A DNA stretch of 64,000 bases from Pecten maximus (taxonomy: Eukaryota), in contig NC_047015.1 in assembly GCF_902652985.1 (NCBI RefSeq), forward strand, positions 23,312,001-23,376,000, read 5' to 3'. Positions 11,301 to 41,300 of this stretch are shown in pieces; the first letter of the stretch is position 1; each line of letters begins with the position of its first letter. The notes under the pieces were generated by a model, which saw only the letters and a program-made list of their open reading frames with translations, had not been told where the DNA came from and made no database searches. Made by a program: the position numbers and the translations under genes.

Positions 11301-14300
11301 TATTTAGAGTAGTTTGGAGTGTGATATTTAGAGTAGTTTGGAGTGTGCTCTTTCGCGTCTTTGGCGTGTCCTCTTTCGCGTCGTTTGGCGTGTGCTCTTT
11401 CGCGTCGTTTTGGCGTGTGCTCTTTCGCGTCGTTTGGGCGTGTGCTCTTTCGCGTCGTTTGGCGTGTGCTCTTTCGCGTCGTTTGGCGTGTGCTCTTTCG
11501 CGCGTTTGGCGTGTGCTCTTTCGCGTCGTTTGGCGTGTGCTCTTTCTCGTCGTTTGGCGTGTGCTCTTTCGCGTCGTTTGGCGTGTGCTCTTTCGCGTCG
11601 TTTGGCGTGTGCTCTTTCGCGTCGTTTGGCGTGTGCTCTTTCGCGTCGTTTGCGTGTGCTCTTTCGCGGCGTTTGGCGTGTGCTCTTTCGCGGCGTTTGG
11701 CGTGTGCTCTTTCGCGTCGTTTGGCGTGTGCTCTTTCGCGTCGTTTGGCGTGTGCTCTTTCGCGGCGTTTGGCGTGTGCTCTTTCGCGGCGTTTGGCGTG
11801 TGCTCTTTCGCGCCTTTGGCGTGTGCTCTTTCGCGTAGTTTGGAGTGTGATATTTAGAGTAGTTTGGAGTGTGATATTTAGAGTAGTTTGGAGTGTGATA
11901 TTTAGAGTAGTTTGGAGTGTGATATTTAGAGTAGTTTGGAGTGTTCCTCACCTGAGTCTGGGAGGGAGTTTAAGTCGCCACATAATATGAGCGGTATGGA
12001 GTTAATGTCCGGGGTGGAGGAACCTGGCCGGAAGCTGCGAATACTTTCTTCGATGATATGCTTGAGTTCCCACATAAGCATCATGGTCTGTATAAGCTTG
12101 ACATCACAGAACTCTGGGTCCCAGTGGATGTGGGCAGTTGCTACCATTATTTGTTGACAGATAAAGTTCTCAGCTGGTGCACCTATGATAAAAAACAATC
12201 TAGGATTACCATTACTATTGCAGCAATATATAGGATTCCAAATCCATTCACAAATGGCATTATCAGTCCTCCGAGTTCTGAGAAGTACACTGATAGATGG
12301 TGTTTTGCTTTTAAATTTAGATTCAACACATCTCACACCTGTGACCTTAAAAGCAGGTCAAAGTCGAAGAAGAAGTCGAAAATGTGAATGGTTTATTGAC
12401 AAATGATGGATGACTGACAAAAGGTCATTAAAATAATTGAGATTTTGTCTCGGTGACCTAAAGATACGAGATTTGTCAAGAGACTATTCACAAGAATCTA
12501 GATAAAAGGGGTAATGGAAATAATATCCATTGCTTAATCAGGATTCTTCCTCTTTCATATAGTAAAGCAGACTTGGGGGATTCCAAAATTCTTTTTCATG
12601 AACTTAAATTGGTCCCCACCTTCCCAACATATCAAAAGATGATCAGCATATGTAACTCTATACATGTAATATTAAGTACAGCAGTTGTCCAATAAAACCC
12701 ACCATTTTCAAAAACACCCTCCTTTGTTTCCAGCATGGCTGCCAGTCCTATATTGTCCTTAGTCATGACCCTGTTAAGCATGTCATCAGAACCCTCAGCA
12801 TTTGCCATGGCAACCTGGTTAAACTCTACTAGATGTTCCTTTAATAAGGAGAATCTGAAATACAATCATAAAGAGGTTTAAGAAGCTGTTCTGATGATGT
12901 AAATCATATATAAATCACATAGAGAACGAGCTTCCAATATATTGGGCTGCCAACATTACTCTCCATCCTCATTTAGTAGTTATATCACTTCACTGCCAAA
13001 ACTACAGCAAGCAAGGTTTATACTAGCCAAACTTTGACTCCACATTATGTCACAGGACGAGATTACCTACTCTATCAAGTGCCCTTTGGGGATGTTTACA
13101 GAGAATTATCTGGCAGACAACATATTCAGACTACAGTGCAGGTTACATAAATATGTCTACACTGTTACAATGTCCTCATTCACTTCAATCCCTCCAAACA
13201 TTATAACTATTCATGTGACTGATGGCTCATCACCTACAATTACCAGTAAATATCTTTTTTTTTTTGATAAAACATGTATAATAAAGGGCACAAACAGAAA
13301 CAGAAAATGACCTGAATCTTCGTACAGCTGTCCTAGGACATACAGTATACAATGGATGGATATTTTTTCATTTACAAGAGTATGCTTATGAAAGCAGGGT
13401 GAAAGTAAGCCAATAAATCTATGAAATACCTACTTTGATGTTCTATAGAATATTGCACAACCATCTACATATTTCCTTTCTGACTCTGTCATGGTCCTTG
13501 CTCGAGATTTGGCAGAGAAGATGCCATCATAGCCATCCCTCTTAAGCTCGGGGAGGAAGAAATTGTAGAACTGGTCAGTTTCTACCTCCTGAAATTACAT
13601 AATTTCAATAATTCAAAAAAAGAAACATGCATGGATTCCAAATACAGATCAAAATTATTAAAAAAATAATGCAGGACAGTTCTACAAATGGGTACAGCAC
13701 ACAGCACTCTGGTACCATACAGGACAGTACTACAGATGGGTACAGCACACAGCACTGGTACCATACAGGACAGTACTACAGATGGGTATACGTACAGCAC
13801 ACAGCACTGGTACCATACAGGACAGTACTACAAATGGGTACAGCACACGGCACTGGTACCATACAGGACAGTACTACAGATGGGTATACGTACAGCACTG
13901 GTACCATACAGGACAGTACTACAGATGGGTACAGCACACAGCACTGGTATCATACAGGACAGTACTACAAATGGGTACAGCACACGGCACTGGTACCATA
14001 CAGGACAGTACTACAAATGGGTACAGCACACGGCACTGGTATCATACAGGACAGTACTACAGATGGGTACAGCACACGGCACTGGTACCATACAGGACAG
14101 TACTACAGATAGGTAATGTATGTGTTTTAGAAATGGATGTTTAACATATTTTGAGATTGGATTTGGTTAAATAGCTCTAAATGATTAAATTATATAGTTT
14201 AAAAAGCTCACAATACTTGTATTTTAAAGAGCATTAGATATTTATTACTGATCTTTTTTGTGATAACAGATCACTACAAAGTTCTAACAAGTGTATGTTA

Positions 14301-17300
14301 TGTCCATCCTCCCTATCACATAATGATGGTTCTTTACCAACTGATATACAGGGTAATATTCTCACCCAACACCTGTACAGGTGTGTAAACATCACAAAGC
14401 TTACTGAGAATCAGTCACTGTACCGACTGATATACAGGGTAATATTCTCACCCAACACCTGTACAGGTGTGTAAACATCACAAAGCTTACTGAGAATCAG
14501 TCACTGTACCGACTGATATACAGGGTAATATTCTCACCCAACACCTGTACAGGTGTGTAAACATCAGAAAGCTTGCTGAGAATCAGTTACTGTACCGACT
14601 GATAAACAGGGTAATATTCTCACCCAACACCTGTACAAGTGTGTAAACATCACAAAGCTTACTGAGAATCAGTTACTGTACCGACTGATAAACAGGGTAA
14701 TATTCTCACCCAACACCTGTACAAGTGTGTAAACATCACAAAGCTTGCTGAGAATAAGTCACTGTACCGACTGATAAACAGGGTAATATTCTCACCCAAC
14801 ACCTGTACAGGTGTGTAAACATCACAAAGCTTGCTGAGAATAAGTCACTGTACCGACTGATAAACAGGGTAATATTCTCACCCAACACCTGTACAGGTGT
14901 GTAAACATCACAAAGCTTGCTGAGAATAAGTCACTGTACCGACTGATATACAGGGTAATATTCTCACCCAACACCTGTACAAGTGTGTAAACATCACAAA
15001 GCTTGCTGAGAATAAGTCACTGTACTGACTGGGGCGTGATGTATACTACATAGGTCAATATCTGTTAACACCTGTACATGTAGCACACATCTGTTGGCTA
15101 TATTTCAGCAATGATTAACACAGGTCATTGATCTGGCTGTCACCAGTCAATCTCCTCTAGACACTTATGTACCCTACCTATAGATCGTATAATAGGTCAC
15201 CCTATTGAAATGTCTACCCTGACATACCGGATATATGTGATTGTCCTTAGTCACTTCTAATAATTATCAACATATGCTGGATTCAGATCACTAAACATAT
15301 CCTGGTTGTTTAGTTCTATTTTCATAAAATCTGCAGTTTCTAAGACCCAGGCATGGTCTGTATACATACAAATACAGGTCAAACACAAAAGGTGCTAGCT
15401 ATATAGTGCCCCTGAAAACCTTCATCCTAATGCTAATAAATATATATAACACCTAGTGCCTCAGGCAGTGTGTCATGTGACATCAGCTATTTTTTGTTGG
15501 TTCAGTGTTCAAAATTGACAAAAATGGTAACGCAATGTAAATATAAGTATTATGAACAAGGGTTTTAATGTCAGCAAAATATCTGGTGGGCTAATAATTC
15601 TGGTAGGTCAAACCTACTGGGTCTACAGTGTCACACTGTTAATGAACCTTGTCAGAAGGGCAAAATATTTGCTGGTTTTACATTTCCAGTACCTTAAAAT
15701 ATAACCCATCAAATAAATACTGTGAATATGCATGTATTATGATTTCTAATAAAGAGTTCTGGAATGTGGTGTCGTGGTGTGTGTCCCATGTCTACAGAAC
15801 TGTGTCATGGTGAGTGTCCCATGTCTACAGACATGTGTTGTAGTGTGTCCCTTGTCTACAGACATGTGTTGTGGTGTGTGTCTACAGACATGTGTTGTGG
15901 TGAGTGTCCCATGTCTACAGACATGTGTTGTGGTGTGTGTCCCCTGTCTACAGACATGTGTTGTGGTGTGTGTCCCATGTCTACAGACATGTGTTGTGGT
16001 GAGTGTCCCCTGTCTACAGACATGTGTTGTGGTGTGTGTCCCCTGTCTACAGACATGTGTTGTAGTGTGTCCCTTGTCTACAGACATGTGTTGTGGTGTG
16101 TGTCTACAGACATGTGTTGTGGTGTGTGTCCCATGTCTACAGACATGTGTTGTGGTGTGTGTCCTCTGCCTACAGACATGTGTTGTGGTGTTGTGGTGTG
16201 TGTCTACAGACATGTGTTGTGGTGTGTGTCCCCTGTCTACAGACATGTGTTGTGGTGTTGTGGTGTGTGTCTACAGACATGTGTTGTGGTGAGTGTCCCA
16301 TGTCTACAGACATGTGTTGTGGTGTGTGTCCCCTGTCTACAGACATGTGTTGTGGTGTGTGTCTACAGACATGTGTTGTGTTGTGTGTCTACAGACATGT
16401 GTTCTGGTGTGTGTCCCCTGTCTACAGACATGTGTTGTGGTGTGTGTCTACAGACATGTGTTGTGGTGTGTGTCTACAGACATGTGTTGTGGTGTGTGTC
16501 TACAGACATGTGTTGTGGTGTGTGTCTACAGACATGTGTTCTGGTGTGTGTCCCCTGTCTACAGACATATGTTGTGGTGTTGTGGTGTGCGTCTACAGAC
16601 ATGTGTTGTGGTGTTGTGGTGTGTGTCTATAGACATGTGTTGTGTGTCTATAGACATGTGTTGTGGTGTGTGTCTACAGACATGTGTTGTGGTGTGTGTC
16701 TACAGACATGTGTTCTGGTGTATGTCCCATGTCTACAGACATGTGTTGTGGTGTGTGTCTATAGACATGTGTTGTGGTGTGTGTCTACAGACATGTGTTG
16801 TGGTGTGTGTCTACAGACATGTGTTCTGGTGTGTGTCCCCTGTCTACAGACATGTGTTGTGTTGTGTGTCTACAGACATGTGTTGTGGTGTGTGTCCCCT
16901 GTCTACAGACATGTGTTGTGGTGTGTGTCCTCTGTCTACAGACATGTGTTGTGGTGTGTGTCCTCTGCCTACAGACATGTGTTGTGGTGTGTGTCCCCTG
17001 TCTACAGACATGTGTTGTGGTGTGTGTCCTCTGCCTACAGACATGTGTTGTGGTGTGTGTCCCCTGTCTACAGACATGTGTTGTGGTGTGTGTCCCCTGT
17101 CTACAGACATGTGTTGTGGTGTGTGTCCTCTGTCTACAGACATGTGTTGTGGTGTGTGTCCTCTGCCTACAGACATGTGTTGTGGTGTGTGTCCCCTGTC
17201 TACAGACATGTGTTCTGGTGTGTGTCCCCTGTCTACAGACATGTGTTCTGGTGTGTGTCCTCTGTCTACAGACATGTGTTGTGGTGTGTGTCCTCTGCCT

Positions 17301-20300
17301 ACAGACATGTGTTGTGGTGTGTGTCCCCTGTCTACAGACATGTGTTCTGGTGTGTGTCCTCTGCCTACAGACATGTGTTCTGGTGTGTGTCCTCTGTCAT
17401 GTGTTCCAGGGTCTGGTTCCACTTTATTACATGTTCTGGGTATTTTCTTCCTATACAGGTTATGGTGCTTGTTATCCATCCCTATAGCCTGATGGCTGTT
17501 AGTCCCATGTTGCTATATACACATCAATTTGTGGACCATCAACCCTTACCAGTGTAGAAGACAATTATTGACCAATATTCAGGTCAACCCTGTATAACCA
17601 GCCAGAGGATAATGACCTATATTTCTGTGTCTGGCCTCTGAACCTTTCTACAGGATTAATAGTGTACTGTCCCAATTTTTTTCAATAGATGCCCCTCTGT
17701 GTACTGTTTTCTTCCCTTTATTTGACAACACAATCCATATAGAGGATCTATATAAGTGGTTACCCCGTATGTGATATGGAGATTATTGAACGAGTCTAAT
17801 AATTCCACATTAAAAAAACTTGAGTGTAAGACTCTGTATATCATGTAACTCATATTTTTGAAAATATTATATAAGTACCTTACTGTATTTAAGACATGGT
17901 AATATTACATGGTAGAATAGAACAGTTATGTGATATGTGTTTTGACTAGGAATAGGTGAATTACTGTATATATATATATACAATGGGAAGCACGCCACAA
18001 CATAATCAGACAGTAATGTGACCATCTGTAGTAGTCAGTCTAACACCTGGATTCCTTGATAACAATAAAAAACAGAAGGGTAACACCTGCATCACAGTCC
18101 CTTTTGATGATGTCAGAGTCTGAAGTTGATGAATTGTGCTCAATTCCGTAAGACGTACCACAACCACACAAAAAGTCCTAAAGAGTCAAACAGTGTAAAA
18201 CTATACAGGACTCATTTGGAGCTAAAGTAAGGATTGATGTTGACTGATAGACTGTAAAGTGAGAATCTCTGTTCATGTTTAGAAGGTACCTGACACACAG
18301 AAAATTAATATATTCTCTGGGGCATAGATAGAGGGACCAACCAACTTCCATGGCATAGATAGATGTAGGAATAACCGACCTCTAAGGCACACATTGAGAG
18401 AACAACCAACCTTCTCTTAAGGCATAGACAGAGGGAACAACAAACATCAAAGGAATTAGTAGTGGAATAAACCAACCTTCTCTTAGATAGAGGGAACAAC
18501 CAACCTTCTCTTAGATAGAGGGAACAACCAACCTTATGAGGGAACAACCAACCTTATGAGGGAACAACCAACCTTATGAGGGAACAACCAACCTTCTCTA
18601 AGATAGAGGTAACAACCAACCTTCTCTAAGATAGAGGTAACAACCAACCTTCTCTAAGATAGAGGTAACAACCAACCTTATGAGGGAACAACCAACCTTC
18701 TCTAAGATAGAGGGAACAACCAACCTTCTCTGAAACAGAGGTAACAACCAACCTTATGAGGGAACAACCAACCTTCTCTAAGACAGAGGGAACAACCAAC
18801 CTTCTCTAAGATAGAGGTAACAACCAACCTTCTCTAAGACAGAGGGAACAACCAACCTTCTCTAAGATAGAGGTAACAACCAACCTTCTCTAAGACAGAG
18901 GGAACAACCAACCTTCTCTAAGACAGAGGGAACAACCAACCTTCTCTAAGACAGAGGGAACAACCAACCTTCTCTAAGACAGAGGGAACAACCAACCTTC
19001 TCTAAGACAGAGGGAACAACCAACCTTCTCTTAGATAGAGGGAACAACCAACCTTCTCTGATGTAATACAGTTGAACTTCCCTAACCGATCATGCACAGC
19101 ACATGGATTTTTGGCCAGGTTGGTGAGGGTTCAGTTTTGAAAAGTGATCCATTTTGAAGAGTCAGGATCCGGATATAATATTGATTGGATGACAATTCAT
19201 ATTTTTGAAGTGTTAATATTATGGACAAAGGTGTGCCGGCATATAGTCAACAAGGAAACAAAAGCACTGCCAATGTGGACAGAGGTGAAACAGGTAAACA
19301 GGAGGAAAGTAAATACATGAGAGGCAATGCCAAATTTAAGGAAAATAAACATACATCAGTTACCTCAAATACCTATGTTCCCTGTGTTAAATACCTGTGT
19401 TCCCGATGTTAAATACCTGTGTTCCCGATGTTAAATACCTGTGTTCCCGATGTTAAATACCTGTGTTCCCAGTGTTAAATACCTATGTTCCCAGTGTTAA
19501 ATACCTGTGTTCCCGATGTTAAATACATGTGTTCCTGATGTTAAATACCTGTGTTCCCTGTGTTAAATATCTGTGTTCCCTGTGTTAAATACCTGTATTC
19601 CTCGTGATGAATACTTGTGTTCCCTGTGTTAAATACCTGTGTTCCCCATGTTAAATACCTGTGGTCCCCATGTTAAATACCCATGTTCCCCGTGATGAAT
19701 ACCTGTGTTCCCTGTGTTCCCTGTGTTAAATATCTGTGTTCCCTGTGTTAAATACCTGTATTCCTCGTGATGAATACTTGTGTTCCCAATGTTAAATACC
19801 TGTATTCCCTGTGTTAAATACCTGTGTTCCCAATGTTAATACATGTGTTCCCTGTGTTAAATACCTGTGTTCCCTGTGTTAAATACCTGCAGTGATGGAT
19901 ACAGAAAATTGTGTAACTGAGGGTATGCCCCCATCAAATTGAAAAAGATGGGGGCTCTTGATCATGACTATAAAATTGGATCTGTTTTAAAGTACTATTA
20001 CATTTTAAGAATGACTTATTGCATCATTTCCTTTAAATAATTGCTATTCATAGCTGCTGAAAACAATTTATTTGGTACAATAAAACTTGGCAATAACAGT
20101 TTCTTTATATGCAGAACTTTTAAAAGAAAGACTGAATATCATATGCTAACAGATTTTTTTCATTCGGAAAATGATCAAACAAAAATTGATGTTAATGTAT
20201 AATGAACATCAAACTAGATCTACATGGAAATCATGTTTTCGTTGGTTTTTTTGTTTTGCAGAATGTTCCTTATTCGTATCTTTTCTTGTTGTGTCCGCTG

Positions 20301-23300
20301 CTGTGTCTTTATAATGTTCGGTGTTTTTATCAGGCCTACTCTCTACATCATGATCATGATGATTCTAAAGAAACGTTATATTTCTTTATGTGTGGAGGTG
20401 GCTTTTGCCATGTTTGGGTTATTAAAGGTCACATAAGCGCTTGGATTTTCGTCATATTTTTAAGCGTTCTTGCGACTCAAGGGGAGTAACTCTAATTACG
20501 ACTTCCGCCTAAATCATGTTTGTTGTAAAGACGACACCAAAACGGTATTGTACTTACTATAATTTCGTTTGATTGATAGAAACATGTTTAAAAATATTAT
20601 TAAACACATCTTGTACCCGCGTTATGTTGATACATATGCGGGTCACACTAGTGTTTTTGCGTGAATTGGCCCCCACTTATATTCTGCAAGTGGGGGCAAA
20701 ACGTAAATTTAGGGGGATTTTAACGATCCCGCGCCCTGGATCTTTCACTGTACCTGTGTTCCCCATGTTAAATACCTGTGTTCCCCGTGATGAATACCTG
20801 TGTTCCCTGTGTTAAATACCTGTGTTCCCCATGTTAAATACCTATGTTCCCCGTGATGAATACCTGTGTTCCCTGTGTTAAATACCTGTGTTCCCCATGT
20901 TAATACCTGTGTTCCCTGTGTTAAATACCTGTATTCCTCGTGATGAATACTTGTGTTCCCAATGTTAAATACCTGTGTTCCCCATGTTAAATACCTGTGT
21001 TCCCCATGTTAAATACCTGTGTTCCCTGTGTTAAATACCTGTGTTCCCCATGTTAAATACATGTGTTCCTGATGTTAAATACCTGTGTTCCCCATGTTAA
21101 ATACCTGTGTTCCCCGTGATGAATACCTGTGTTCCCCATGTTAAATACCTGTGTTCCCCATGTTAAATACCCATGTTCCCCGTGATGAATACCTGTGTTC
21201 CCCATGTTAAATACCTGTGTTCCCCATGTTAAATACCTGTGTTCCCCGTGATGAATACCTGTGTTCCCTGTGTTAAATATCTCTGTTCCCTGTGTTAAAT
21301 ACCTCTATTCCCTGTGTCAAATAAAATTTCATTTCCCCAGAAGATTATCTAGTGACCTTTCAGGAAACCTAGCTAATGATCTTTATTACAAGTACATAAT
21401 CCAGAGAACTTTATTCCAAGAAAACAATCAAGTGACCTTTATTCCACGAAGATAATTCAGTGACTGGTTTTCCAAACAGGAAACCTAATGAGCTTCATTA
21501 TAAGTATAAATGTTATCAGGTATAAGTAGAGTGACAGAACAAGAGATAAAGGAAAACATGGGGTGGCTGTAATGACAAGGACTCACCTGTAGACAGATGA
21601 TATCTGCAGCACAATGTTTGATCTCCTCCATGATGCCCTTCTTCCTGTACTCCCAGTTGAGGGCCCATGAGGGGCAGTACCCGTACAGCTGTCTTGTGCA
21701 GTATTTATCACAAAGTACATTGTAGCACATCACAGTGAAGATGGCTGCAACATAAACAATAGATATAAATGTCATGGGTAGCATAAAATCATTGAATTGT
21801 ACACATGAACAGAACTACTGTATTATTACTTTGACATACCAGTCACTGGTAACTACAGTATAGTTTGACATACCAGTCACTGGTAAATACTGTATTCTTA
21901 CTTTGACATACCAGTCACTGGAAACTACGGTATTCTTACTTTGACATACTAGTCACTGGTAACTACAGTATTCTTACATTGACATCGTGTTTTATTATCA
22001 TTATTTTTTTGTTGTTATTTTTTCTGCAGACCAGGTACTATTTTTAATGGCAGACGTATAATTACTCATGGAATATTTTTAATGAGTGTCGACCATTTCA
22101 AGTTAATAGACCTATCTTAAAATTGTAATATTTTAATAAATAATTAAATTTGTTTTCATTTCATAAAAACTTCTAGACTCATTTCATAAAATCTCATATG
22201 AAATGAAAACTCATTTAAGATCCTATATGTGTATGGTTTCATTCAGGTATCTGCAACAACTACTAAGTTAAACCCAAAACATGGTGTTATTGACCAGATT
22301 TGGCATATGACCATAAACTGTAACCTTGTCTATGACCTCATGAATGTATATATATATAGATATGTATTTTATATGGTAGAGGTCTATAATAACAAACAAA
22401 TAGAAAGCTGGAACTAGAATCTGAAAAGTTGAATGTGAGTTAAGGCTGTAGGTTCCTAGATTTGTTTATGCTGTGGTATAAACCACACCTTTTAACCTTG
22501 AACAGATTTATACATTATAGATAGTGTGAAGGAATTCATCACTGTACATACTGTACACAGATATCCTTTACTGTAAGGTATATCAATACACGCTATCAGG
22601 CATTCATTAGCAATGAAACAAAGGTAATACATAATGCTTGCTTATTTTTTACTGACCCCGATAGGTTGTTAAAGGGACAAAAAATTACCTGATCTGTGTG
22701 GTCAGTGTAAGGAAGGTCAAGTGATTTAACTGACCATCAAGCAATAAACAGTAGGACTACATGCCTAATTTATCCTGTACTCTGTCCAGTCACTATATAC
22801 ATTAACCAAACAAGGAAAATCGGTAACACTGAAAGCAGATATCAAAATACTTATATTACACCCATACAGGTCTTTGCCCTTAAGCATGATCAGTACATCA
22901 GAAACTTAGTGTCAGTATATATGTAGATATTATTATATGTAGTGTCAGTATATATGTAGATATTATTATATGTAGTGTCAGTATATATGTAGATATTATT
23001 ATATGTAGTGTCAGTATATATGTAGATATTATTATATGTTGTGTCAGTATATATGTAGATAATATTATATGTTGTGTCAGTATATATGTAGATATTATTA
23101 TATGTAGTGTCAGTATATATGTAGATATTATTATATGTTGTGTCAGTATATATGTAGATAATATTATATGTTGTGTCAGTATATATGTAGATATTATTAT
23201 ATGTAGTGTCAGTATATATGTAGATATTATTATATGTAGTGTCATGACAGTATATATGTAGTTATTATTATATGTTGTGTCAGTATATATGTAGATAATA

Positions 23301-26300: not shown

Positions 26301-29300
26301 TGAAGTCCCACTGGTAACACCTGACAGACTCTGTACCTAAATACCTCCTTTCTCATACCTCTTCTAGCCCAACCCTTCACTCCATAAACTGACACAGATT
26401 TAAATATGACCTCACCACTTCCAGCCTCATGCGGTGGTTATCATGTAGGACTATTAATTACATAAAAACATGTAAGCCTAAAACTCTGTGTGTGTGTGTA
26501 ACCATTGTAGGTTAATAGATTACTGGTGTACATCCTCACCAACCTCTCCACTTGTCAGTGTTTTCCTGCAAACCATTATAGAGTTTTATTAAGCTGCCAG
26601 TCAAAGTCAACATTGTTGCAAATTCCTAAAATTCTTGAATAATTTTTGTTGCTTTGCCATAAAAAACAAGCATTCCCATAAAAACTATTTACACTCCCCC
26701 ATTAGATAATGTTTAAAATGTATTCTGTACCAAAAGAAACCACTAATTACAGAATAAAATGTCATCAGGTCTTTTACTGTGCATCACAACAGGCTAATTA
26801 TCATCAAATATTGTTGTGTTCTAAATTATCCAAGGTTTATAAATTTCCTTGATTTGATATCTGCATATGTATATGGTTTTTTCATAAGATTTTTTCTAGA
26901 TTATTTAGTGGCAATATATATATATATAAAAAAGAAAGAAAAACATTCTGTCCAAAACATTTGAATTACATTTCTATGTAAAATATATGTACATGTACAT
27001 ATAAAGGTGATGATCATGATATGACTGTTTCTCAGTGGGTTTAATTTCTGGCTACCTCATCATGTGGAACTGCATAATGACAGTGACTATACCCTCCAGC
27101 CATATCTGTCCTCTTGGCCAGAGCTAGTGTAATGACCATCAAACCAAGAATGTAAGGGTTAACATTCCAATGCCATAAAACTGTACCCTGAACACACCCC
27201 ACATCAGTTAGGCCATCTGTAATATCACTGTAGTTTTGACATGGTTTGACACCTCAAATAATCGTCACTAGATTTCATCTCTAAGGATATCACCTGCTTT
27301 TCGTGATGATATATATAGAAAGTTTGTGGTGCATCCCCACAGCTACAATATCATCACCGGATCACCGTCTGGTATGTTAATTATGCTCCTCTACATTTTT
27401 TGTAACCTTTTTTTCTTTATGTTTGATGTTTTCAATAGACTGTGTGTATGTTTTATGTGAATGTAAAAAAAAAAATAAAAAAATCAGTCAACAAAATAAA
27501 TAGTTGAATAAAACATTCCTCATATAAAAAATGTAATTTCAAATTAACTGAAAACTCTGTTGAAATGTGCATAAGGGGTATCAGTATATAAAATAAATTC
27601 AACATTAATTTGATAATCATTATCATTACACATAGCAATTATACACCTAACACCATTGAATTGACAAAACCTATTTATAAAACCCAACTTTTTTTGTTTA
27701 AGCAACAGGAAGCAATCCCACACTCCCTTCGCCACCTACTCCCAGATGACTGTAGTGACCATGTGTTGCATGGCTACACCTCAAAATATATGTGCATGCC
27801 TACAATTTGTTTTGACCCTGACAAGAATTGTTGAATAACACAGCTTATCCTAATTGCATCTGCTCTCAATCCTGACTACATGTAAACCCAGTCCATGACC
27901 CTGCTGCACCTGTATACCACAGGAAACAACCTGAACCAAGCAGCTCAGTACAGGCCAGATTAGACACATCGCATTATAACATCAAATATAGTAATAATCT
28001 GAGATGGGATTATTGTTATGTTGTATGTTATGTTCTAAATCAATACTTTTACTGTATTCAAGCTATCAAAATAATGAGTCACCATTGAACTTTTTGTGTT
28101 TTTGATTCATGCCATTAAATATTCCTGACCTTGGCACAGAGGACAGTTGATATACAAATGTATACTGTTTGTATACTCCTGACCTTGACTGAGAGGACAG
28201 TTGATATACAAATGTATACTGCTTGTATACTCCTGACCTTGACTGAGAGGACAGTTGATATACAAATGTATACTGCTTGTATACTCCTGACCTTGACTGA
28301 GAGGACAGTTGATATACAAATGTATACTTTGTATACTCCTGACGTTGACTGAGAGGACAGTTGATATACAAATGTATACTTTGTATACTCCTGACCTTGA
28401 CTGAGAGGACAGTTGATATACAAATGTATACTGTTTGTATACTCCTGACCTTGACTGAGAGGACAGTTGATATACAAATGTATACTGTTTGTATACTCCT
28501 GACCTTGACTGAGAGGACAGTTGATATACAAATGTATACTGTTCGTATATTAATGACCTTGATGAGAGGACAGTTGATATACAAATGTATACTTTGTATA
28601 CTCCTGACCTTGACTGAGAGGACAGTTGATATACAAATGTATACTGTTTGTATACTCCTGACCTTGACTGAGAGGACAGTTGATATACAAATGTATACTG
28701 TTTGTATACTCCTGACCTTGACTGAGAGGACAGTTGATATACAAATGTATACTGTTTTATTTTACACAATTTGTCCGAGAGGTATAACTAATATACAGAT
28801 GTTGCCTGAGAAGTATTTCTAACCTTGATCCAGGGGTACATATGATTTATATGTGTAGCAAGCTTTATTCTGAATGTCAAAAAACAAAAACAGCTTCTTC
28901 AGTTTTCTTGTTTCATTAATGTGTTTGTTAAAATAACTGCTGACTCTAGTAAAATTTAATCAACAAATATTTTTAAAATGCTAAGCATGACAACAGTCGT
29001 CGGTGCTTATATATAATATGAACACAGACAAATGCAAGGTAAGGGATGGGTGGTACAAACTTCAGAACCGTATCACGCATTTCATTAGTAACAATTTATC
29101 ATCTGTCAGATAGCTCTCCTCACAACTACCTACAGGCAGTATATATTTACCTTCACCCATTGCAGACCCATCAACATTAGATTAATCACAGCTTTAAAAC
29201 AATTCTAAGTTGTTTTTTAAAGTTTGCCTTATCTAAATTTACTCATGAAATTCAAATAATTGTAGGAGTGAACTAGTCTCTCACCTGTTGGTCTGTTCCT

Positions 29301-32300
29301 TTCAGAATTGGCTAACCATACCCACTGTCGACTAGGCGGCTGAGTGGAATTGACTGAAATGACAATAACAATACATATCAAAATGAGAATGTAATTAATT
29401 TATGAAACACTTACTTCACTTACAAATGTTATGAAGTCTCACAAAGTCCCTTGTTTCACCACAGCAATAAACAGTACACTCTTCCATAGGGTGGGATGCA
29501 CTATAACATACTTGAAGAAGGGTTATTTTTTGGTTTTGTGCCTTTGGCAGTTCTCATTGTTCAAGATACTCTGAAAGTGATCTGTAATGCCTTGGGAGAA
29601 GGCATCCATTAAAGTACTATTGGAAAAAAGAAATTCATGCTTTCTTCAGGAGGTCCAGGCTAGCCTAGATCAATGTGCCAGTGCCCGATTGGCCCCCTTA
29701 CGGATCAGATTAATTTGTCACCAATTTCTACTCTCATCTATAAATAGGTTGACAGGGTAGGAATAAAGAAAGTGATGTCTGGGACAGTATCAAACATACA
29801 CACGAAGTAAAGAGGTAACTCCTCTTGTGATTTTATCACAAAGCTGCTAGTGGAAATGCAAAACAAACCTTTGAGAACTTCCAAAACTTCTAAAAGACCC
29901 TGCAGCTCAGGAAGTCAGAATGAGCTGAATGTTCAGTTAGATCAAGGTCATATGATATAATCCTGTACTTGTTTATATATATGGACCAATGTGGGGGTAA
30001 GGGCCATGTAGTAGTCCATAGGGACTTATTTGGAGCTTGAGGCTAGGCTCATCTACTAGTCTCTGATCTATAGGGACCAAGCTTAACTAGTCTATAGGGA
30101 CCAATTTGGGGACTAGGTTAATGTACTTATCTATAGGGGTGGGGGCAATGTGGGGCTACAAGACTCATAATGCACAAGGCTATAGGGGGTCAATGTGGGG
30201 GCTGATCCTGTTACAGTCTATAGAGGCCAATCAGGGGGCTAGGACCCTGTTAGTCTATAGAGGCCCAATGTGGGGGGCTAGGACCCTGTTAGTCTATAGA
30301 GGCCCAATGTGGGGGCTAGGATCCTGTTAGTCTATAGAGGCCCAATGTGGGGGCTAGGATCCTGTTAGTCTATAGAGGCCCAATGTGGGGGCTAGGATCC
30401 CGTTACAGTCTATAGAGGCCCAATGTGGGGGGCTAGGATCCTGTTAGTCTATAGAGGCCCAATGTGGGGGGCTAGGATCCCGTTACAGTCTATAGAGGCC
30501 CAATGTGGGGGGCTAGGATCCTGTTAGTCTATAGAGGCCCAATGTGGGGGGCTAGGATCCTGTTAGTCTATAGAGGCCCAATGTGGGGGGCTAGGATCCT
30601 GTTACAGTCTATAGAGGCCCAATGTGGGGGGCTAGGATTCTGTTACAGTCTATAGAGGCCCAATGTGGGGGCTAGGATTCTGTTACAGTCTATAGAGGCC
30701 CAATGTGGGGGGCTAGGATCCTGTTACAGTCTATAGAGGCCCAATGTGGGGGCTAGGATCCTGTTACAGTCTATAGAGGCCCAATGTGGGGGGCTAGGAT
30801 CCTGTTACAGTCTATAGAGGCCCAATGTGGGGGGCTAGGATTCTGTTACAGTCTATAGAGGCCCAATGTGGGGGCTAGGATTCTGTTAGTCTATAGAGGC
30901 CCAATGTGGGGGCTAGGATCCCGTTACAGTCTATAGAGGCCCAATGTGGGGGGCTAGGATCCTGTTACAGTCTATAGAGGCCCAATGTGGGGGCTAGGAT
31001 TCTGTTACAGTCTATAGAGGCCCAATGTGGGGGGCTAGGATTCTGTTACAGTCTATAGAGGCCCAATGTGGGGGCTAGGATCCTGTTACAGTCTATAGAG
31101 GCCCAATGTGGGGGCTAGGATTCTGTTACAGTCTATAGAGGCCCAATGTGGGGGGCTAGGATCCTGTTACAGTCTATAGAGGCCCAATGTGGGGGGCTAG
31201 GATCCTGTTACAGTCTATAGAGGCCCAATGTGGGGGCTAGGATCCCGTTACAGTCTATAGAGGCCCAATGTGGGGGCTAGGATCCTGTTACAGTCTATAG
31301 AGGCCCAATGTTGGGGCTAGGATTCTGTTAGTCTATAGAGGCCCAATGTGGGGGCTAGGATTCTGTTACAGTCTATAGAGGCCCAATGTGGGGGGCTAGG
31401 ATTCTGTTACAGTCTATAGAGGCCCAATGTGGGGGGCTAGGATTCTGTTACAGTCTATAGAGGCCCAATGTGGGAGGCTAGGATCCCGTTACAGTCTATA
31501 GAGGCCAATGTGGGGGGCTAGGATCCTGTTAGTCTATAGAGGCCCAATGTGGGGGGCTAGGATCCCGTTACAGTCTATAGAGGCCCAATGTGGGAGGCTA
31601 GGATCCCGTTACAGTCTATAGAGGCCCAATGTGGGGGGCTAGGATCCTGTTAGTCTATAGAGGCCCAATGTGGGGGCTAGGATTCTGTTACAGTCTATAG
31701 AGGCCCAATGTGGGGGGCTAGGATTCTGCTCGTCAAGTTCTATCAACATTTATATTAAACCATGCATGGTGATAAGATCTGGTATCAGGTGCCTGCTCCA
31801 GATGACAGCCCAGATAATGATATTTAAACTCTCAATACACAAAGAAAAAAACATGTACACAACATAGTTTATCAAATCTCCATCCACAAAAAAACAATGC
31901 CCCGAGAGTCCTGATGTGTATATGGCAGAGGTCAGTGTAGGACACCACCGACATGTGTCAGTGACATGCTATATGGACCTATACCTATCAGCATGTATAA
32001 TATGTATATCAATCATACAACAGCTGCTGTTCAAAGTTACATCAAAAGGGGGGAAATTACGCTCTGAATAAATTGAATTTTAATCAAATGTTTCTGAATT
32101 AATTGAAACCTGAGCCTCAGATATACAACAGGACAAAGTAAGAATAGTCTTGTTTATGGAAGAAATGAAGAATTTTAACAGGTCTTTATGTGCATGTGCA
32201 TAAATAATACCTAAACAGCAGGTAGGAGTCAGCCATGCTGAACATGTTGACTTATACTGCCTTTATTGGGAGTCCATGTATAGGTGGGATAAAGGCAACA

Positions 32301-35300: not shown

Positions 35301-38300
35301 AATTAAAAAAGTACTTTGTACAAGACATTTCATATATAGATATAAGTTATTTTTAATACTCTGTTTTCTTTGCTGTATTTTCTACCCTAGACTAATATCA
35401 ACAGATTAGGGATAATGATTCCTCTTTATTGAGGAAATCTGAGCAAAATTTCTTTTCTTCTGGTCCAAGTTCACTAAAATATTGTGATACTGGTGTTAAT
35501 TGTGTTAATACTGGACATGACAACACCGAAAATTAATACCACTCACAAATATCTGACATTTACACAATTCAACTTCTACCATAGTAAACTAGTGGTAAAA
35601 CAGAAACTTAGTAAAACTAATGACTTCAAGTTTATGTCTACAGTTCCACTGACCTGGTTTCTAGATTACCCCTGCCATAAGTGTAGCATGCAGCATACAA
35701 TTATTAATATCACTCAGGCTTGGCTCCCTTTTGTTTTGATCTTGTTCTACTGGCTAACTCTGGATAATGTAATGTACAGATCAGCAATCAAGTCATGTCT
35801 GGCTTAAACTCAATGGCTGACTTATGCTAGGTTGTGGACCTAAATCTGTTAAGGTCATTTTATACAGAATAAACATTATTTTTTTGGTTTATCTGAGGTT
35901 AGTTTGTTGTCCTTACAAAAGGTAAGATTGTATAACAACAGTAACCATATATCTGACAGGGCGTCATCTGAAATGTCATAATCTGCAATTTCTGTACACG
36001 GTATCATGACAATCCACCCTGTCACATTAAACAGGCTAACCAGATTCTTGTTCCAATATATAAAGACAAAGGTTAAACGGAGAGTAGTGAGTACATTTAA
36101 TTATAAGGATATTTTGTTTGTCTTGGTCAGGAGACTAGAACCCATGGCCTTCTTTACTTCCAAACTCAACTCTTGCCAAGTCAAGCAATACAAAAAGTAG
36201 AAGGAAGTAGAAAGGAGATAAAAATATTTTCTTTGTTTTCGTGACATTTGAGTCGATTGAGAGGGCACAACACAAAAACCTCAATATCCTGTACTCAGCT
36301 GTAGGGATCTAAATTTCCATCTTAGGATTACAATGAGTTTAATTGTATAATGAATTCAACATAAAGTAAGCAGTTACTTGAATCTTAATTGACAGTACTT
36401 TATTTCACCACAGTGCACTTTTCTTTTTTGATAGAGCACATTTGTAACCAATAAAAAGAAGAGTCATACACAAAAAAAAAAAAAAAAAAAGAAGAATCAA
36501 TTCCCTTTGGTAACAGTTGAAATTAGATAAGTTATGATCATTTATTTTATGATTATTCGATCAAACCAATAGGTGACAATGCCCAAGATATTATACTCAC
36601 AAGATCTTAGTTGATGTGGGGGGATCATCTGTGTCTTGGGGACATTGGTTGTGTCCAGGGGGTGGCTGTACATAGAAGTGGCAAGGCTGTATACTGGAGG
36701 GTAGATGTATGGCCAGTACCAGTGGGGCACCGACATGTGGGACAGGTCTGTCAACGATTCCGAGGAGGGCTCCCCCGAAACACCAGACTGCCACATCAAC
36801 TCAGACATGGAATGATTCCTGGAAGTTGCATAGTTGTTTTCAGCACTATGTAGCTGACTGATGATGCCTGATGAATCATTAGTGTCTATTAACCAGCTAT
36901 GATCATAATACACAGTAAATGTTACATCAGTACCCGTCAAATCAACATAAACACTGTCAGGGAACAGGTCTTCACTGGATTTACCTCCCCTTCCAGCAAT
37001 ATCTATATCCAGCAGTTGTCTACCCCTGTCAGATCTTTGGCAATTGTTCTTTGGATTTCTAGATTTGAATGGTTGAGCATTTTTGGATAATTTGGACTGA
37101 GCGGGTGGTATGGTAGGTGAGACTTCAGAGGAATCAGTTGTGGTTGTCAAAGATGCCTCATCAGCTTCCGAATCTCGTATAGTAGTAGGTACAGTGAAAG
37201 ATGCAGGACTTGGTTCCTCACACTCCTGGTCCTCATGGAATTCAAAGGCATTGTCTCCATGGTCATAGTAATACCGACTATTATACAAATCAGATAGACA
37301 CTGAGGACATTCTGAGGGTGGGCAGTCAAATCGTACCAGGGGACATCCTGTTGTGAACAAAGCCAATTTCTCCAACTCGTCTTTGGACATTCTGGAATTC
37401 TCTGAATTTTCGTATGAAACGGACTGATCAGAGTCAGACTGGATTTCAGAACTTGAGATTGTAGATCCATTTTCACTCTCTGTATCTTCTGTTGTAACAG
37501 AACTTTTCTCACTGCTATTCAAGTCATTGCATATGACATCAACATTTTCACATTCGATGATGCTCCTGGGTCGAGAGCTGTCCTTTGTGTCAGTGACATA
37601 GTTTGCATTATTGAGAACATAATTAGCCACAAGTTTTGAATTTCTGTTTTGGGCACTGTGTGTGAAATTTGTACACCTGTCTTTCTGATGGGACTTCTCT
37701 ATGACAGAGATTAAGGCACTTAGATGTTTGACATCATTCTTTCGTTTGAGATGTTTGATGTTGGTTGAATTGTCCTCCCTACCTGAAGAACTGTCCCCTT
37801 CGTTGTCTATGGATACCTCAACATCCTTACATTTGATTACAGTGTCCGCCAGAGAGCGCTGTTTCTGTCTCAGAGCTGCCTTTAAAGAATCTTTTAGCTG
37901 AATGACAATTGGGGTATTGGATTTAGTTGGCTTCTGGCGAGATTTCTGTTTCCATTTGGGGCTATTTCGTGAACGTTCTTTTTGGCACTTTTTACATGCT
38001 TGATGAGTTGTAGTGGCAGGACTCTTCCACATGTTTTTAACATAAATGGGTTCTACAGGCTCAACCGCGTCCATTATACTGACCACTTCACGCTTGACCA
38101 CTGCCATCTTAGCCATGTATATATTTCAAAGACTCACTGACCTTAGAACTGCATTCTGTTGTGACTGGACCCACGTCCCCTTTAGTTATGACAGGACGTG
38201 TTCTATCCGCAATGGTTTGCTATATTCACCTGTGTATCATAAGACAAAGGCTTCGGTGTTTCTAGGTAGGAGCATGCCAATAACTCTATTACAATTACGT

Positions 38301-41300
38301 AGTCTTACACACAACAAGGTCCGTTTTCGTCACTTAAGCCATCAATTCAAACACAAAAAACACTCAATTTGAAGCAGTGGTTCTAAACAAAACCTCCACA
38401 AGTTTCACTGACTCAAGTTCAGGTAATGATCACACCAATAACCGTCTCACAGGAACACCAACACATAACATAAAAGTAGACAAAGAGCCAATCCTCAATG
38501 GGCACACGATTTGTACACTGACACAGACCTCTCTCCACCCAAGGAGATTTGTCCAATACGTAATGTCTACTTATAGAGTCTGTGTGTTAGATATCCCAAT
38601 CCTTCAATAGAATCTTACTGAATACTGTGGAAATGAGATCAACATTAGAATTTTGTTAAACGGTGACAATTTCCTGCTCTTTGTTCGGCTAGTGACATGT
38701 GCTTTGGTTGAGAGTCCAGTGGACACAAGGCCATTGCCCCGGTAAATATTTAGTCAGAACCTTGATCTGATGAAAATGTCACCAAGTAGTACTAATAAAG
38801 TAGTCACCTGTTTAGAAAGTTACATCACATCATTACACATTACTGATGATATCACTGATCATATATGTATTACACACCTCCTTCCAGCCATTTTCTCCGA
38901 TACCATCCAAGTAAATAGTCCATATCTCAATAAAATCAAATCCAGACTTTTGTTTAGAAAATAAACAGGTATATGGCAGGGTTGAGTGAGGTGAGGTGTC
39001 TAGCGTGTTCCCCCAGGGCTGTATCACACAGGGGTTAGAACACCTAGGTAAGGTATACACAGTACTAATAGTGTTGTACACACATGTAGCTCCATTCCCG
39101 GTGTGGTTCACGCATGTCTGTGTTCAGTGGCGGGTATATCCATTCAAGTTCAGTAATCTGTGTATGATTAGTTAACCAAGCCTGCAAAAAAGGTCGTATA
39201 CTGTGATATCCCTCGCCAACAGAGAAAGTCACTGGTTAACAAAGGCCAGGACTGTACACAGTAGTAGTTTACCATACAGGCTTAAAGGCAAATGTTTATG
39301 ATGATTATCATATACCTGTTAAAGTGTTCACTGCCTATTAACTGTAGATCCTGAGTCAATACTATAAGTCCTTATTCACATGCTACTTTCCTTTTTGTGG
39401 ACCATGTGCTTTCACAGGCAGTTAGTACACGCTGATTAATTTTATGAATGGCTGTGAGTAGGAGTTGTAGAAGTGTTATCTTATCGGGTGTCAGGAGTTG
39501 TAAGATTCTTGACCTTGTACCTGATGACACTCCCCCACACACATTTGACCCCATTGAGGGGCTAGGCTAAGGGAGGGGCAATAGATGAGTAACACTTCAC
39601 TTCAGGAGATGCATTTTGTCCTGGTACATTCCCCATAACCACACCAGTAAAGCAGCGGTGACGTAGAGCGGTGAGGTGAACAATTACTTCACATACCAAC
39701 CTTGTTTGCTTAGTAATCCTTTTGTTATCGTTTTGTCTGTTGATCAAAACGAAATATATGTTATTCTCGGAAAAGTCTGGAGAAAGGAGAAAAGAAGCCA
39801 CTTTGTTGTGATGTATAAGAGCATACACTGGTAGGGCGGCTCATTAATCAGTTATTATGAAGTGTATACATACAGGTAAAGCTGCTCCTTCATTAATCAG
39901 TCATTATGATGTGTGGCAGACCAACATGTGCTGGCTATATATATTACCATGTATACATGTGTGTGTCCCTATCTCACCTCTATCTATGGCTTTGATATCC
40001 GCATGGGTCCTACACAGGCCCTATACTGATGTGTCCACTCATGGGTTGATGTACTTGCCCCTGAAGATGAGCTTACCTTTGACCATCTATATAACCAGTG
40101 GAGGTGTATATGTCCTCTCAGTACACCTTGGCCTTGCTAGCTATGTACTCCTTCGTGTGTACGTCCTATTTCAGACAGTGCTGATGACCACTGTGCACTG
40201 CGTTCCTGATAGAATGCCCCTAACTGCCTCCCCTACACAGGTCCTCAGACCCTCAACATCACAAATTCCATGATGGTTCCCATTTGTCATACAACCAGCT
40301 CACCATCTCTCTCCAGTGCAGGGGAAATCACCTCAACTTCATGACATCACAAATGCTAATCAACATCTCCAGCATCCATAGCTAGTCACATGACCGACAT
40401 CATTGCCAAAGAGTAGTGTTCCACTGGTTTTTCTAAACATTAGAGAGTGGTCGTACACAATAACCAATAAACAGCTTTTGTTATTCTTCCAGCCTCTCGG
40501 TGAATAGAAAATATTGTCAAATAAAAGGTGGAGTCAATAATTTAAGAACTAGAGCCTTGACTCATCAGCTGACAGGGTGTTATACAACCAAGACTAATGC
40601 TGGTTTTGTTTAATCCTAGTTCTGGTGACAATTATTATTAATTCTAATAAAAACACACACTATATAAATCTATAACAAAATATACATATTGATGCTATAT
40701 ATATATATAGGAGCTTTATTTTTCAGGACATCATGTTCCGAGGAAGGCAATATGAGTCAGTACTGTTATGTGTATATAGTAAAGAGCAGGAAATCAATAC
40801 AGAAGAAGCCCCAACAATATCAAAATGTCATTACAAGATTGATATTGTACTAAACATTTACTATCCTTATCTGGAGTCGGGAAAGCTACAGCTGGCGTGA
40901 TGGCTTTATATAAGGGCTTTGTCCCTTTCTCAGGTCATCAACATCTATATCACCTTACACAAGCATCTCCTATATAGCTATCTCACACCAAAAGATTAAA
41001 CTGAATATAGGAACTCCAACAGGCTTCTTTAAACTCAGATATAATGGGAATGAGTTAAGAGACTTGGTTTATCATACCTAAGATTATTGTATTGTACATT
41101 TTAAAACCATTTAGATTGCAAGAAAATGACTTTTAACCACATATGTAATGCCATTGTCAGGCAATTATGATTTCGACCTATTTTATTCATTAGGACACTT
41201 CATCGTGATTTTGTCCTGTTTTATTCCTCAGGACACTAAATTGTGATTTCGTCCTATACTATTCCTTAGGACACTTAGTTGTAATTTTGTCCTATATTAT

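What the first reader, a model, noticed from the sequence alone, without database searches (positions are those of the whole stretch)
37061..37096. PAM2-like (PABP-interacting) motif in the novel N-terminus
Seen: SKLSKNAQPFKS within a low-complexity S/T/P-rich stretch. Known: PAM2 (xxLxxxAxxFxP) binds the MLLE domain of PABP. PAN3, TOB and GW182 use it to bring deadenylases to poly(A) tails. The L3, A7 and F10 anchors match and N6 is typical, but P12 is replaced by S. Inference: the isoform may swap the CAF1-binding LRR for a direct PABP tether, making a self-targeting CCR4.
Basis: partly seen in the sequence, partly recalled or inferred. Interest (0 to 1): 0.8.

Follow-up and report, generated by a model that had tools for sequence, protein, structure and literature searches.

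The report
PAM2-like motif in scallop CCR4 isoform
The 12-residue peptide is real, lies in an expressed, LRR-less alternative N-terminus of the scallop CCR4 poly(A) nuclease and is conserved among scallops, but it is only a weak, non-canonical match to the PABP-binding PAM2 motif and is missing from most other molluscs that share this N-terminus.

Summary
Observation confirmed. SKLSKNAQPFKS is encoded on the minus strand at 37096-37061, residues 341-352 of Pecten maximus LOC117328226 isoform X1.

The host exon (CDS 38116-36602) is an alternative first exon of the CCR4/CNOT6-like gene. It lies in the intron downstream of the last LRR exon (61252-61154). RNA-like contigs from four runs splice it from 36601 to the common exon at 29353. 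The LRR swap is therefore real. The N-terminus is old, shared by bivalves, gastropods, a chiton and Lingula, and is predicted mostly disordered.

The motif keeps PAM2 positions L3, S4, A7 and F10 but fails position 5 (K, not P/V/T) and position 12 (S, not P). It gets no Pfam PAM2 hit. A matrix built from the scallop's own PAM2 sites scores it 10-13 bits against 32-40 bits for those sites (0.26% of shuffles reach it).

It is a 15-residue conservation island in four Pectinida sequences. Its anchors recur in one distant pteriomorph. L and F are absent from mytilids, oysters, arcids, heterodonts, gastropods, the chiton and Lingula.

A co-fold with a mollusc PABP MLLE domain gave weak support only. 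Verdict: a plausible, clade-restricted, weak PAM2-like PABP tether (about 40%), with binding unproven.

The parts
37061..37096 (-). PAM2-like 12-mer SKLSKNAQPFKS (aa 341-352). L3 is at 37090-37088, A7 at 37078-37076 and F10 at 37069-37067.
37055..37099 (-). Conservation island QSKLSKNAQPFKSRN (aa 340-354), invariant in four Pectinida sequences. Its upstream flank is 0-25% invariant per 12-aa window over the preceding 36 residues; the downstream windows are 58-75% invariant.
36601..39504 (-). Alternative first exon of the long, LRR-less CCR4 isoform. The 5' UTR reaches at least 39504, the ATG is at 38116, the CDS runs to 36602 plus one base of a split codon, and the GT donor is at 36600-36599.
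29253..29353 (-). First common exon (FNSTQPPSRQW…), used by both the LRR isoform and the long isoform. The acceptor side at 29353 is fixed by the loose ends of the RNA contigs. The lower boundary is approximate.
8127..21748 (-). Exons of the EEP nuclease domain (PF03372): about 21748-21587, 13606-13433, 12856-12698, 12192-11950, 8753-8538 and 8366-8127.
61154..61252 (-). Last LRR-region exon of the canonical CNOT6-like isoform. It is 100% identical to aa 130-162 of Ylistrum isoform X2 and lies upstream of the alternative exon.

Best explanation
The window carries the Pecten maximus CCR4/CNOT6-like gene on the minus strand. A promoter inside the intron after the LRR exons produces a second mRNA. 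Its first exon encodes a 505-aa, mostly disordered N-terminus that replaces the LRR, and it is spliced to the shared EEP nuclease exons. These steps are shown. Inside a variable linker of this N-terminus, scallops and their nearest relatives keep a 15-residue island, QSKLSKNAQPFKSRN, under purifying selection. This is also shown. The most likely role of the island is a weak, non-canonical PAM2-type ligand. Leu343 and Phe350 would fill the two hydrophobic pockets of the PABP MLLE domain, Ala347 would pack on the MLLE methionine, and Ser344 would take the place of the usual Asn. That would bring an LRR-less CCR4, which cannot dock on CAF1, directly to PABP-coated poly(A) tails. This last part is inferred. 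If true, it is an add-on of the Pectinida lineage, not the ancestral function of the N-terminus.
For: Gene and isoform: 100% match to isoform X1, 898 aa, PF03372; exon map; paired LRR and LRR-less isoforms from one gene in several species; LRR exon upstream. Searches show contigs at depth 11-32 over the exon against 0-3 in the flanks. All break at 36601, and the loose end equals window 29325-29353. Motif: anchors L3, S4, A7 and F10 fit the definition in PMC2854688. It is the third-longest invariant run among four Pectinida sequences, in an otherwise variable stretch. The only nucleotide changes between Pecten and P0004 within the run are synonymous, at the L and F codons. In P0014 (44% identical, flanks not alignable) the sequence is LSLHVNAQCFESRNP, which keeps L, N, A, F and has V at position 5. 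With the motif columns masked, P0014 groups with Pectinida (SH-aLRT 72), which is compatible with one origin. The motif lies in a pLDDT<50 stretch, residues 289-381. The matrix from native scallop PAM2 sites is reached by 0.26% of shuffles. The scallop has PABP MLLE exons with the KITGMLLE signature. Co-fold of a mollusc PABP MLLE (P0245, aa 8-99) with aa 327-366: ipSAE 0.34 against a best control of 0.02, graded 'weak support'. The runs agree in at least 77% of contacts and the partner's pLDDT is at least 54. The mark was reached by 51 of 78 solved complexes and 2 of 108 mismatched pairs, but scores of 0.60 or under came from only 5 of those 78 solved complexes and from all 4 mismatches that passed.
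Against: There is no Pfam PAM2 hit at E<=10 on the exon or on the peptide alone. The locus is not among the 12 genome-wide PF07145 matches of 17.5 bits or more. As a positive control, a canonical scallop site is reported by the same scan at 16.5 bits. Position 5 is K where P, V or T fits a hydrophobic cavity. Position 12 is S where P is usual. Position 9 is P where E is preferred. The matrix score is 10-13 bits against 32-40 bits for native sites. L and F are absent at the orthologous position, and no PAM2-like site exists elsewhere, in the N-termini of mytilids, oysters, Pinctada, arcids, heterodonts, a unionid, gastropods, a chiton and Lingula. Across pteriomorphs the shared residues are N-A…R-N-P, not L or F. 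Q8 and S-R-N-P, which PAM2 binding does not require, are conserved too, which hints at a different or additional constraint. The co-fold pass is weak, peptides are outside the test's calibration, and similarity to solved PAM2-MLLE complexes may be recalled from memory.
Confidence: 0.4

Rival explanations
1. The island is a functional short linear motif, but not a PAM2. It binds some other partner, and the L...A..F spacing is coincidental. The older N-A…R-N-P patch shared by pteriomorph bivalves would be its core.
For: Arcids (NNAQNNPERNP), a pterioid (QNAESESNRNP) and mytilids (SA-LSRKRNP) keep N-A and R-N-P at the same spacing without L or F. Q8, S12, R13, N14 and P15, which are irrelevant to MLLE binding, are as conserved as the anchors between Pectinida and P0014. 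There is no Pfam PAM2 hit and two PAM2 determinants fail.
Against: No other known motif class fits the sequence; that rests on my own inspection, not a tool. The residues gained in Pectinida and P0014 are exactly the two PAM2 pocket residues. The co-fold is above its controls. The host is a poly(A) nuclease, for which PABP is the obvious partner.
Confidence: 0.35
2. Chance resemblance with no specific function. The run of identity reflects limited divergence among scallops and weak constraint in a linker.
For: Short motifs match by chance. The three-anchor pattern occurs in 3% of shuffles. Three of the five carriers are 80% identical overall. A local HMM built from native sites does not separate it from shuffles: -3.8 bits, reached by 29% of shuffles.
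Against: The upstream flank is 0-25% invariant (per 12-aa window over the preceding 36 residues) in the same four sequences, whereas the island is 15 of 15 invariant. The anchors persist in a sequence only 44% identical whose flanks cannot be aligned. The changes at the L and F codons are synonymous.
Confidence: 0.2
3. The open frame is not part of CCR4 at all but a separate intronic gene or a transposon remnant.
For: It sits inside a large, repeat-rich intron and has no Pfam domain.
Against: RNA-like contigs from four runs in three studies join it to the common CCR4 exon at a GT donor. One 4797-nt contig continues 2461 nt beyond the junction. Orthologous fused proteins exist in more than 15 species, some on transcript-sized contigs.
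Confidence: 0.02

Closest known systems
PAM2 motifs of PAN3 and TOB1/TOB2, which recruit deadenylases to PABP through the MLLE domain
   Same: A short peptide in a disordered region with L3, a polar residue at position 4, A7 and F10, attached to the poly(A)-shortening machinery. PAN3 and Tob sites are themselves low-affinity and deviate from consensus (PMC2854688).
   Different: Here the motif sits on the catalytic CCR4 polypeptide itself, not on an adaptor. K is at position 5 and S at position 12. It is below the Pfam threshold, confined to one bivalve clade, and binding is untested. PMC3870282 states that no Ccr4-Not subunit carries a PAM2.
eRF3 PAM2-N (LNVNAKPFVP type)
   Same: N6-A7-x-P9-F10 ('NAKPF' against 'NAQPF'). 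Pro at position 9 is tolerated there.
   Different: eRF3 has V at position 5 and P at position 12, plus a second overlapping site that raises affinity. The scallop motif has neither.
Canonical CNOT6/CNOT6L (CCR4a/b, Drosophila twin)
   Same: The EEP nuclease exons are identical because they come from the same gene. They are 98% identical to the Ylistrum CNOT6-like isoform X2 and match the CNOT6L structures 3NGQ and 7VOI.
   Different: This isoform lacks the LRR that binds CAF1. It carries instead a 505-aa, mostly disordered N-terminus with no Pfam, PDB or Atlas relative.
LRR-less EEP deadenylase relatives (Nocturnin, ANGEL1/2, PDE12)
   Same: EEP nucleases that act outside the CCR4-NOT complex with their own targeting regions.
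   Different: Those are separate genes with diverged nuclease domains (E of 1e-8 or weaker). Here the true CCR4 nuclease is re-targeted by alternative promoter use.

Membership tests
PAM2 (PABP-interacting motif 2, PF07145 / ELM LIG_PAM2_1) | Hydrophobic residue, usually Leu, at position 3 | tested here: met
   L343. Definition from PMC2854688.
PAM2 (PABP-interacting motif 2, PF07145 / ELM LIG_PAM2_1) | Polar Asn, or less often Ser, at position 4 | tested here: met
   S344. Native scallop sites also use S (L009, L016, L019).
PAM2 (PABP-interacting motif 2, PF07145 / ELM LIG_PAM2_1) | Pro, Val or occasionally Thr at position 5, fitting a small hydrophobic cavity | tested here: not met
   K345. 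All ten native scallop sites have P or V. P0014 has V. A Pro-to-Ala change costs about 5-fold in Paip2.
PAM2 (PABP-interacting motif 2, PF07145 / ELM LIG_PAM2_1) | Invariant Ala at position 7 | tested here: met
   A347.
PAM2 (PABP-interacting motif 2, PF07145 / ELM LIG_PAM2_1) | Invariant Phe (Trp in PAM2w) at position 10 | tested here: met
   F350.
PAM2 (PABP-interacting motif 2, PF07145 / ELM LIG_PAM2_1) | Pro, usually, at position 12 | tested here: not met
   S352. One sub-threshold native scallop site (L017, 19.1 bits) also has S there.
PAM2 (PABP-interacting motif 2, PF07145 / ELM LIG_PAM2_1) | Reaches the Pfam PF07145 gathering score (20 bits) | tested here: not met
   No hit at E<=10 on the exon or on 42- and 67-aa cut-outs. 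Not among the genome-wide matches of 17.5 bits or more. The ELM regular expression, recalled from memory, is also not matched.
PAM2 (PABP-interacting motif 2, PF07145 / ELM LIG_PAM2_1) | Lies in an accessible, intrinsically disordered region | tested here: met
   AlphaFold2 with a 40-sequence alignment gives pLDDT below 50 over 289-349 and 351-381 and no secondary structure there.
PAM2 (PABP-interacting motif 2, PF07145 / ELM LIG_PAM2_1) | Conserved among orthologues as an island | tested here: inconclusive
   It is an island in four Pectinida sequences plus P0014. L and F are absent in all other lineages that carry the N-terminus.
PAM2 (PABP-interacting motif 2, PF07145 / ELM LIG_PAM2_1) | [quoted passage not shown] | tested here: inconclusive
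   Co-fold ipSAE 0.34 against a best control of 0.02, graded 'weak support'.
CCR4 / CNOT6-type deadenylase | EEP (PF03372) nuclease domain of the CCR4 type | tested here: met
   (CNOT6L structures, E 5e-58).
CCR4 / CNOT6-type deadenylase | N-terminal LRR that docks on CAF1 | tested here: not met
   This isoform has no LRR and no Pfam domain in its first 505 aa. The LRR exon at 61252-61154 belongs to the other isoform.

The most novel reading that the evidence does not exclude
In scallops the LRR-less long CCR4 isoform is a CCR4-NOT-independent deadenylase that carries its own PAM2-type tether to PABP. That would be the first PAM2 found on a CCR4 catalytic subunit, and an example of a linear motif arising de novo in a much older disordered alternative N-terminus shared across Lophotrochozoa.
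Probability: 0.3. Interest if true: 0.6.

Novelty: new member of a known kind. Interest (0 to 1): 0.4.

Why it matters
Reviews state that no Ccr4-Not subunit carries a PAM2 and that CCR4-NOT reaches PABP only through Tob/BTG adaptors (PMC3870282). A CCR4 nuclease that drops its CAF1-docking LRR and binds PABP directly would be a new way of aiming the enzyme at poly(A) tails.

Apart from the motif, this work documents an expressed, LRR-less CCR4 isoform that is conserved across the phylum, has its own promoter and carries a 500-aa disordered N-terminus. I found no paper describing it. Its universally conserved blocks (NTPIVIQLKD.LKAAL, TTGCPLIRYDCPPSECPQC, RQLLDIDI, DSVYIDLT.TDVTFTVYY) are better targets for functional study than the clade-restricted 12-mer.

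Tried and rejected
- **Pfam scans** of the exon and of 42- and 67-aa cut-outs at E<=10 found nothing.
- **Local HMM** built from ten native scallop PAM2 sites (hmmsearch): -3.8 bits, reached by 29% of shuffles. It is uninformative because local mode aligns only fragments such as EF.P. I replaced it with a full-length matrix.
- **PDB profile search** with the N-terminal alignment matched only the EEP columns.
- **ESM Atlas** gave no hit of 0.9 or more.
- **Earlier findings of the scan** returned nothing, by place or by words.
- **Mite isoform:** the N-terminus of the LRR-less Panonychus isoform is not homologous to the mollusc one, so it says nothing about the motif.
- **Separate intronic gene or transposon ORF:** rejected by the spliced RNA contigs.
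- **Scallop MLLE domain:** A database protein from a gastropod (P0245, 88% identical over the exon) stood in for it.
- **Positive control for the co-fold:** a canonical scallop PAM2 could not be run because the cap is one job.
- **Careful version of the 48-row tree:** it did not finish. I used a quick 22-row tree with the motif masked instead.

Full report
**1. The observation**

The plus strand has a stop. The peptide is residues 341-352 of a 524-codon open frame at 36542-38116(-).

**2. What the open frame is**

- A word search gave a 100% match over residues 1-505 to 'uncharacterized protein LOC117328226 isoform X1' of Pecten maximus (P0001, 898 aa). Its C-terminal half is an EEP domain, PF03372.
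- tblastn of P0001 on the window maps the rest of the protein to minus-strand exons at about 29357-29253, 21748-21587, 13606-13433, 12856-12698, 12192-11950, 8753-8538 and 8366-8127.
- A search with the EEP half showed that it is a bona fide CCR4/CNOT6-like nuclease. It is 98% identical to 'CCR4-NOT transcription complex subunit 6-like isoform X2' of the scallop Ylistrum (P0045, 560 aa, with LRR Pfam domains).
- In several species one gene yields two forms: a form of about 560 aa with LRR plus EEP, and a form of about 870-960 aa with no LRR. An example is Gigantopelta P0065 and P0034, which lie on one contig.
- Mapping P0045 on the window places the last LRR-region exon at 61252-61154(-). That is upstream of the big exon, and both forms enter the same common exon.
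- The big exon is therefore an alternative first exon lying in the intron after the LRR exons.
- I used the database's own spliced models (P0001, P0045).

**3. Is the isoform expressed?**

- I laid contigs of four public runs from three studies on window:35000-40000. Their small size suggests transcriptomes, although their records do not say RNA.
- In each run a single contig covers 36601 up to 38897-39504 at depth 11-32. The flanks have depth 0-3.
- Every contig breaks at 36601, with a loose end that matches window 29325-29353 exactly.
- The break lies at a GT donor (…AGA TCT T|GTGAGT). The junction restores …LRS|FNSTQPPSRQW.
- One contig of 4797 nt continues 2461 nt beyond the junction.
- The exon is therefore transcribed from its own start, at or beyond 39504, and is spliced to the nuclease exons. 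The motif shows no variant in these contigs.

**4. Age and nature of the N-terminus**

- The same N-terminus fused to the nuclease is found in pectinids, Pinctada, oysters, Mytilus, Tegillarca, a unionid, heterodonts, gastropods and a chiton.
- It is also in the brachiopod Lingula (BLASTP E 3e-22).
- The LRR-less isoform of the mite Panonychus has an unrelated N-terminus.
- The mollusc N-terminus has no Pfam family, no PDB relative and no Atlas relative.
- AlphaFold2 with a 40-sequence alignment predicts it mostly disordered. Of 505 residues, 311 have pLDDT below 50, and only five short helices are predicted.
- The motif lies in the low-confidence stretch 289-381. That is the right setting for a linear motif.

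**5. How good a PAM2 is it?**

The structural definition in PMC2854688 is --Phi-(P/V)-A--F-P. Position by position:

| Position | Requirement (PMC2854688) | Scallop motif |
|---|---|---|
| 3 | Hydrophobic, usually L | L, fits |
| 4 | N, less often S | S, fits |
| 5 | P, V or T, in a hydrophobic cavity | K, fails |
| 6 | Exposed | N |
| 7 | Invariant A | A, fits |
| 8 | Exposed | Q |
| 9 | E preferred | P, as in eRF3 PAM2-N |
| 10 | Invariant F, the main determinant | F, fits |
| 11 | Not conserved | K |
| 12 | Usually P | S, fails |

- Pfam's PAM2 model reports nothing at E<=10 on the exon or on short cut-outs.
- A six-frame scan of the whole scallop genome with PF07145 lists 12 sites of 17.5 bits or more, and this locus is not among them.
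- Those native sites read L-[NSR]-[PV]-x-A-x-[ENV]-F-x-[PS]. One of them is picked up by the ordinary Pfam scan, so that scan can see canonical sites.
- A full-length matrix from ten native sites scores the motif 9.6-13.4 bits against 32-40 bits for the natives. The native scores are inflated because those sites trained the matrix. Only 13 of 5000 composition-matched shuffles of the N-terminus reach the motif's score.
- It is therefore a better-than-chance match but a clearly sub-canonical one.

**6. Conservation**

- Among 54 long-isoform N-termini, the pattern L...A..F occurs in only five, always at the orthologous place. They are Pecten, Mizuhopecten, Argopecten, P0004 (66-70% identical, sister to the three) and P0014 (44% identical, from a metagenome).
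- In the four Pectinida sequences, QSKLSKNAQPFKSRN is the third-longest invariant run of the exon. The 36 residues before it are 0-25% invariant.
- Between Pecten and P0004 the only nucleotide changes in the run are synonymous, at the L and F codons.
- P0014 reads LSLHVNAQCFESRNP. It keeps L, N, A, Q, F, S, R, N and P, and has V at position 5, although its flanks cannot be aligned.
- With the motif masked, P0014 groups with Pectinida (SH-aLRT 72, neither strong nor rejected). One origin is therefore possible.
- Everywhere else the anchors are missing. Examples are arcids NNAQNNPERNP, a pterioid QNAESESNRNP, mytilids SA-LSRKRNP and oysters TNSPSEKSD. Heterodonts, gastropods, the chiton and Lingula are unrelated at this place.
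- None of those sequences has a PAM2-like site elsewhere in the N-terminus.
The motif is a clade-restricted feature on a much older N-terminus.
- The residues shared more widely, N-A…R-N-P, are not the ones PAM2 binding needs.

**7. Binding test in silico**

- The scallop genome has PABP MLLE exons with the KITGMLLE signature.
- An intron cuts the domain after …SLEAK, so I used a complete mollusc PABP C-terminus from the database. This was P0245 from Batillaria, 88% identical over the exon.
- I co-folded P0245 residues 8-99 with P0001 residues 327-366. The score was ipSAE 0.34 in three runs against a best control of 0.02, and the verdict was 'weak support'.
- The runs agree in at least 77% of contacts, and the partner's pLDDT is at least 54.
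- The mark was reached by 51 of 78 solved complexes and 2 of 108 mismatched pairs. Scores of 0.60 or under came from only 5 of those 78 solved complexes and from all 4 mismatches that passed.
- Peptides are outside the calibration, and a pass may reflect memory of solved PAM2-MLLE complexes.
- This raises my odds a little and does not settle the question.

**8. Mechanism and rivals**

- *Shown:* an expressed CCR4 isoform without the CAF1-docking LRR, and a selected 15-residue island in its disordered N-terminus in scallops.
- *Inferred (about 40%):* the island is a weak PAM2-type ligand that puts L343 and F350 into the two MLLE pockets. It would tether this free CCR4 to PABP on poly(A) tails. 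Weak sites are functional in PAN3 and Tob, which bind up to 30-fold weaker than eRF3 (PMC2854688).
- *Rival, about 35%:* a different, unknown motif built on the older NA…RNP patch.
- *Rival, about 20%:* chance resemblance with no specific role.
- *Rival, refuted:* a separate intronic gene.

**9. Comparison with what is known, and novelty**

- PAM2 motifs are known in PAN3, Tob1/2, GW182, eRF3, Paip1/2, ataxin-2, LARP4 and others.
- PMC3870282 states that none of the Ccr4-Not subunits has one.
- Paper searches for PAM2 with CNOT6, and for alternative first exons of CCR4, found no description of this isoform or motif.
- If it binds, it is a new member of the PAM2 class on a new kind of host, the CCR4 nuclease itself, in one bivalve clade.
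- It fails two sequence determinants and the Pfam threshold. I therefore file it as 'PAM2-like, works-like claim untested', not as a PAM2 family member.

**10. Verdict**

Interest is moderate (0.4). The LRR-less isoform is solid and under-studied. The PABP-tether idea is plausible but rests on a weak motif, on clade-limited conservation and on a weak co-fold.

Noticed in passing
L013, L014, L015 (G000 C8:833910, C18:32532558, C15:33198515): A canonical PAM2-type peptide (SQLNPKANEFIPTN, 20.1 bits) recurs in near-identical long open frames on three chromosomes. These frames carry integrase zinc-binding and integrase core domains, so they are retrotransposon pol-type ORFs. A PABP-binding motif on a retroelement polyprotein may be worth a look. 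I observed it only.
   Followed up: partly
L001 and L002 (G000 C18:31061378 and 31076000): Two nearly identical PABP MLLE exons lie 14.6 kb apart, which suggests tandemly duplicated PABPC genes or a duplicated assembly segment. A third partial MLLE exon is at C18:26564418 (L003). A fourth, with the domain in one exon, is at C2:9897022 (L004) and may be UBR5-like.
   Followed up: no
window 11057-11990, 13627-14144, 15746-17557, 22898-23811, 25873-26317, 28066-28822, 33485-34458, 41873-42679: The introns of the CCR4 gene are packed with long minisatellite-like tandem arrays that give spurious open frames in several phases. One array abuts the EEP exon at 11950-12192.
   Followed up: no
P0073 (Panonychus citri), P0044 (Dendroctonus), P0066: Arthropod CCR4 genes also have long LRR-less isoforms, but their N-termini are not homologous to the mollusc one. 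Replacing the LRR by alternative 5' exons seems to have arisen more than once.
   Followed up: partly
window 36602-38116 (-), aa 41-50, 67-90, 128-146, 186-232, 247-273, 366-404, 464-503: Blocks conserved from bivalves to gastropods and partly to Lingula: CKKC.KER, NTPIVIQLKD.LKAAL, KDVKNLSALISVIEK, ECENVDVICNDLN followed by an acidic Ser-rich run, TTGCPLIRYDCPPSECPQC (a four-Cys signature), RQLLDIDI, DSVYIDLT.TDVTFTVYY and PKT.MIPP.EL. Their function is unknown, and they are far better conserved than the PAM2-like 12-mer.
   Followed up: partly
window 37174, 37268, 37494: Single-base differences (C>T, G>A, G>A) between the RNA-like contigs of different runs and the assembly, inside the exon but outside the motif. 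They are probably population polymorphisms.
   Followed up: no
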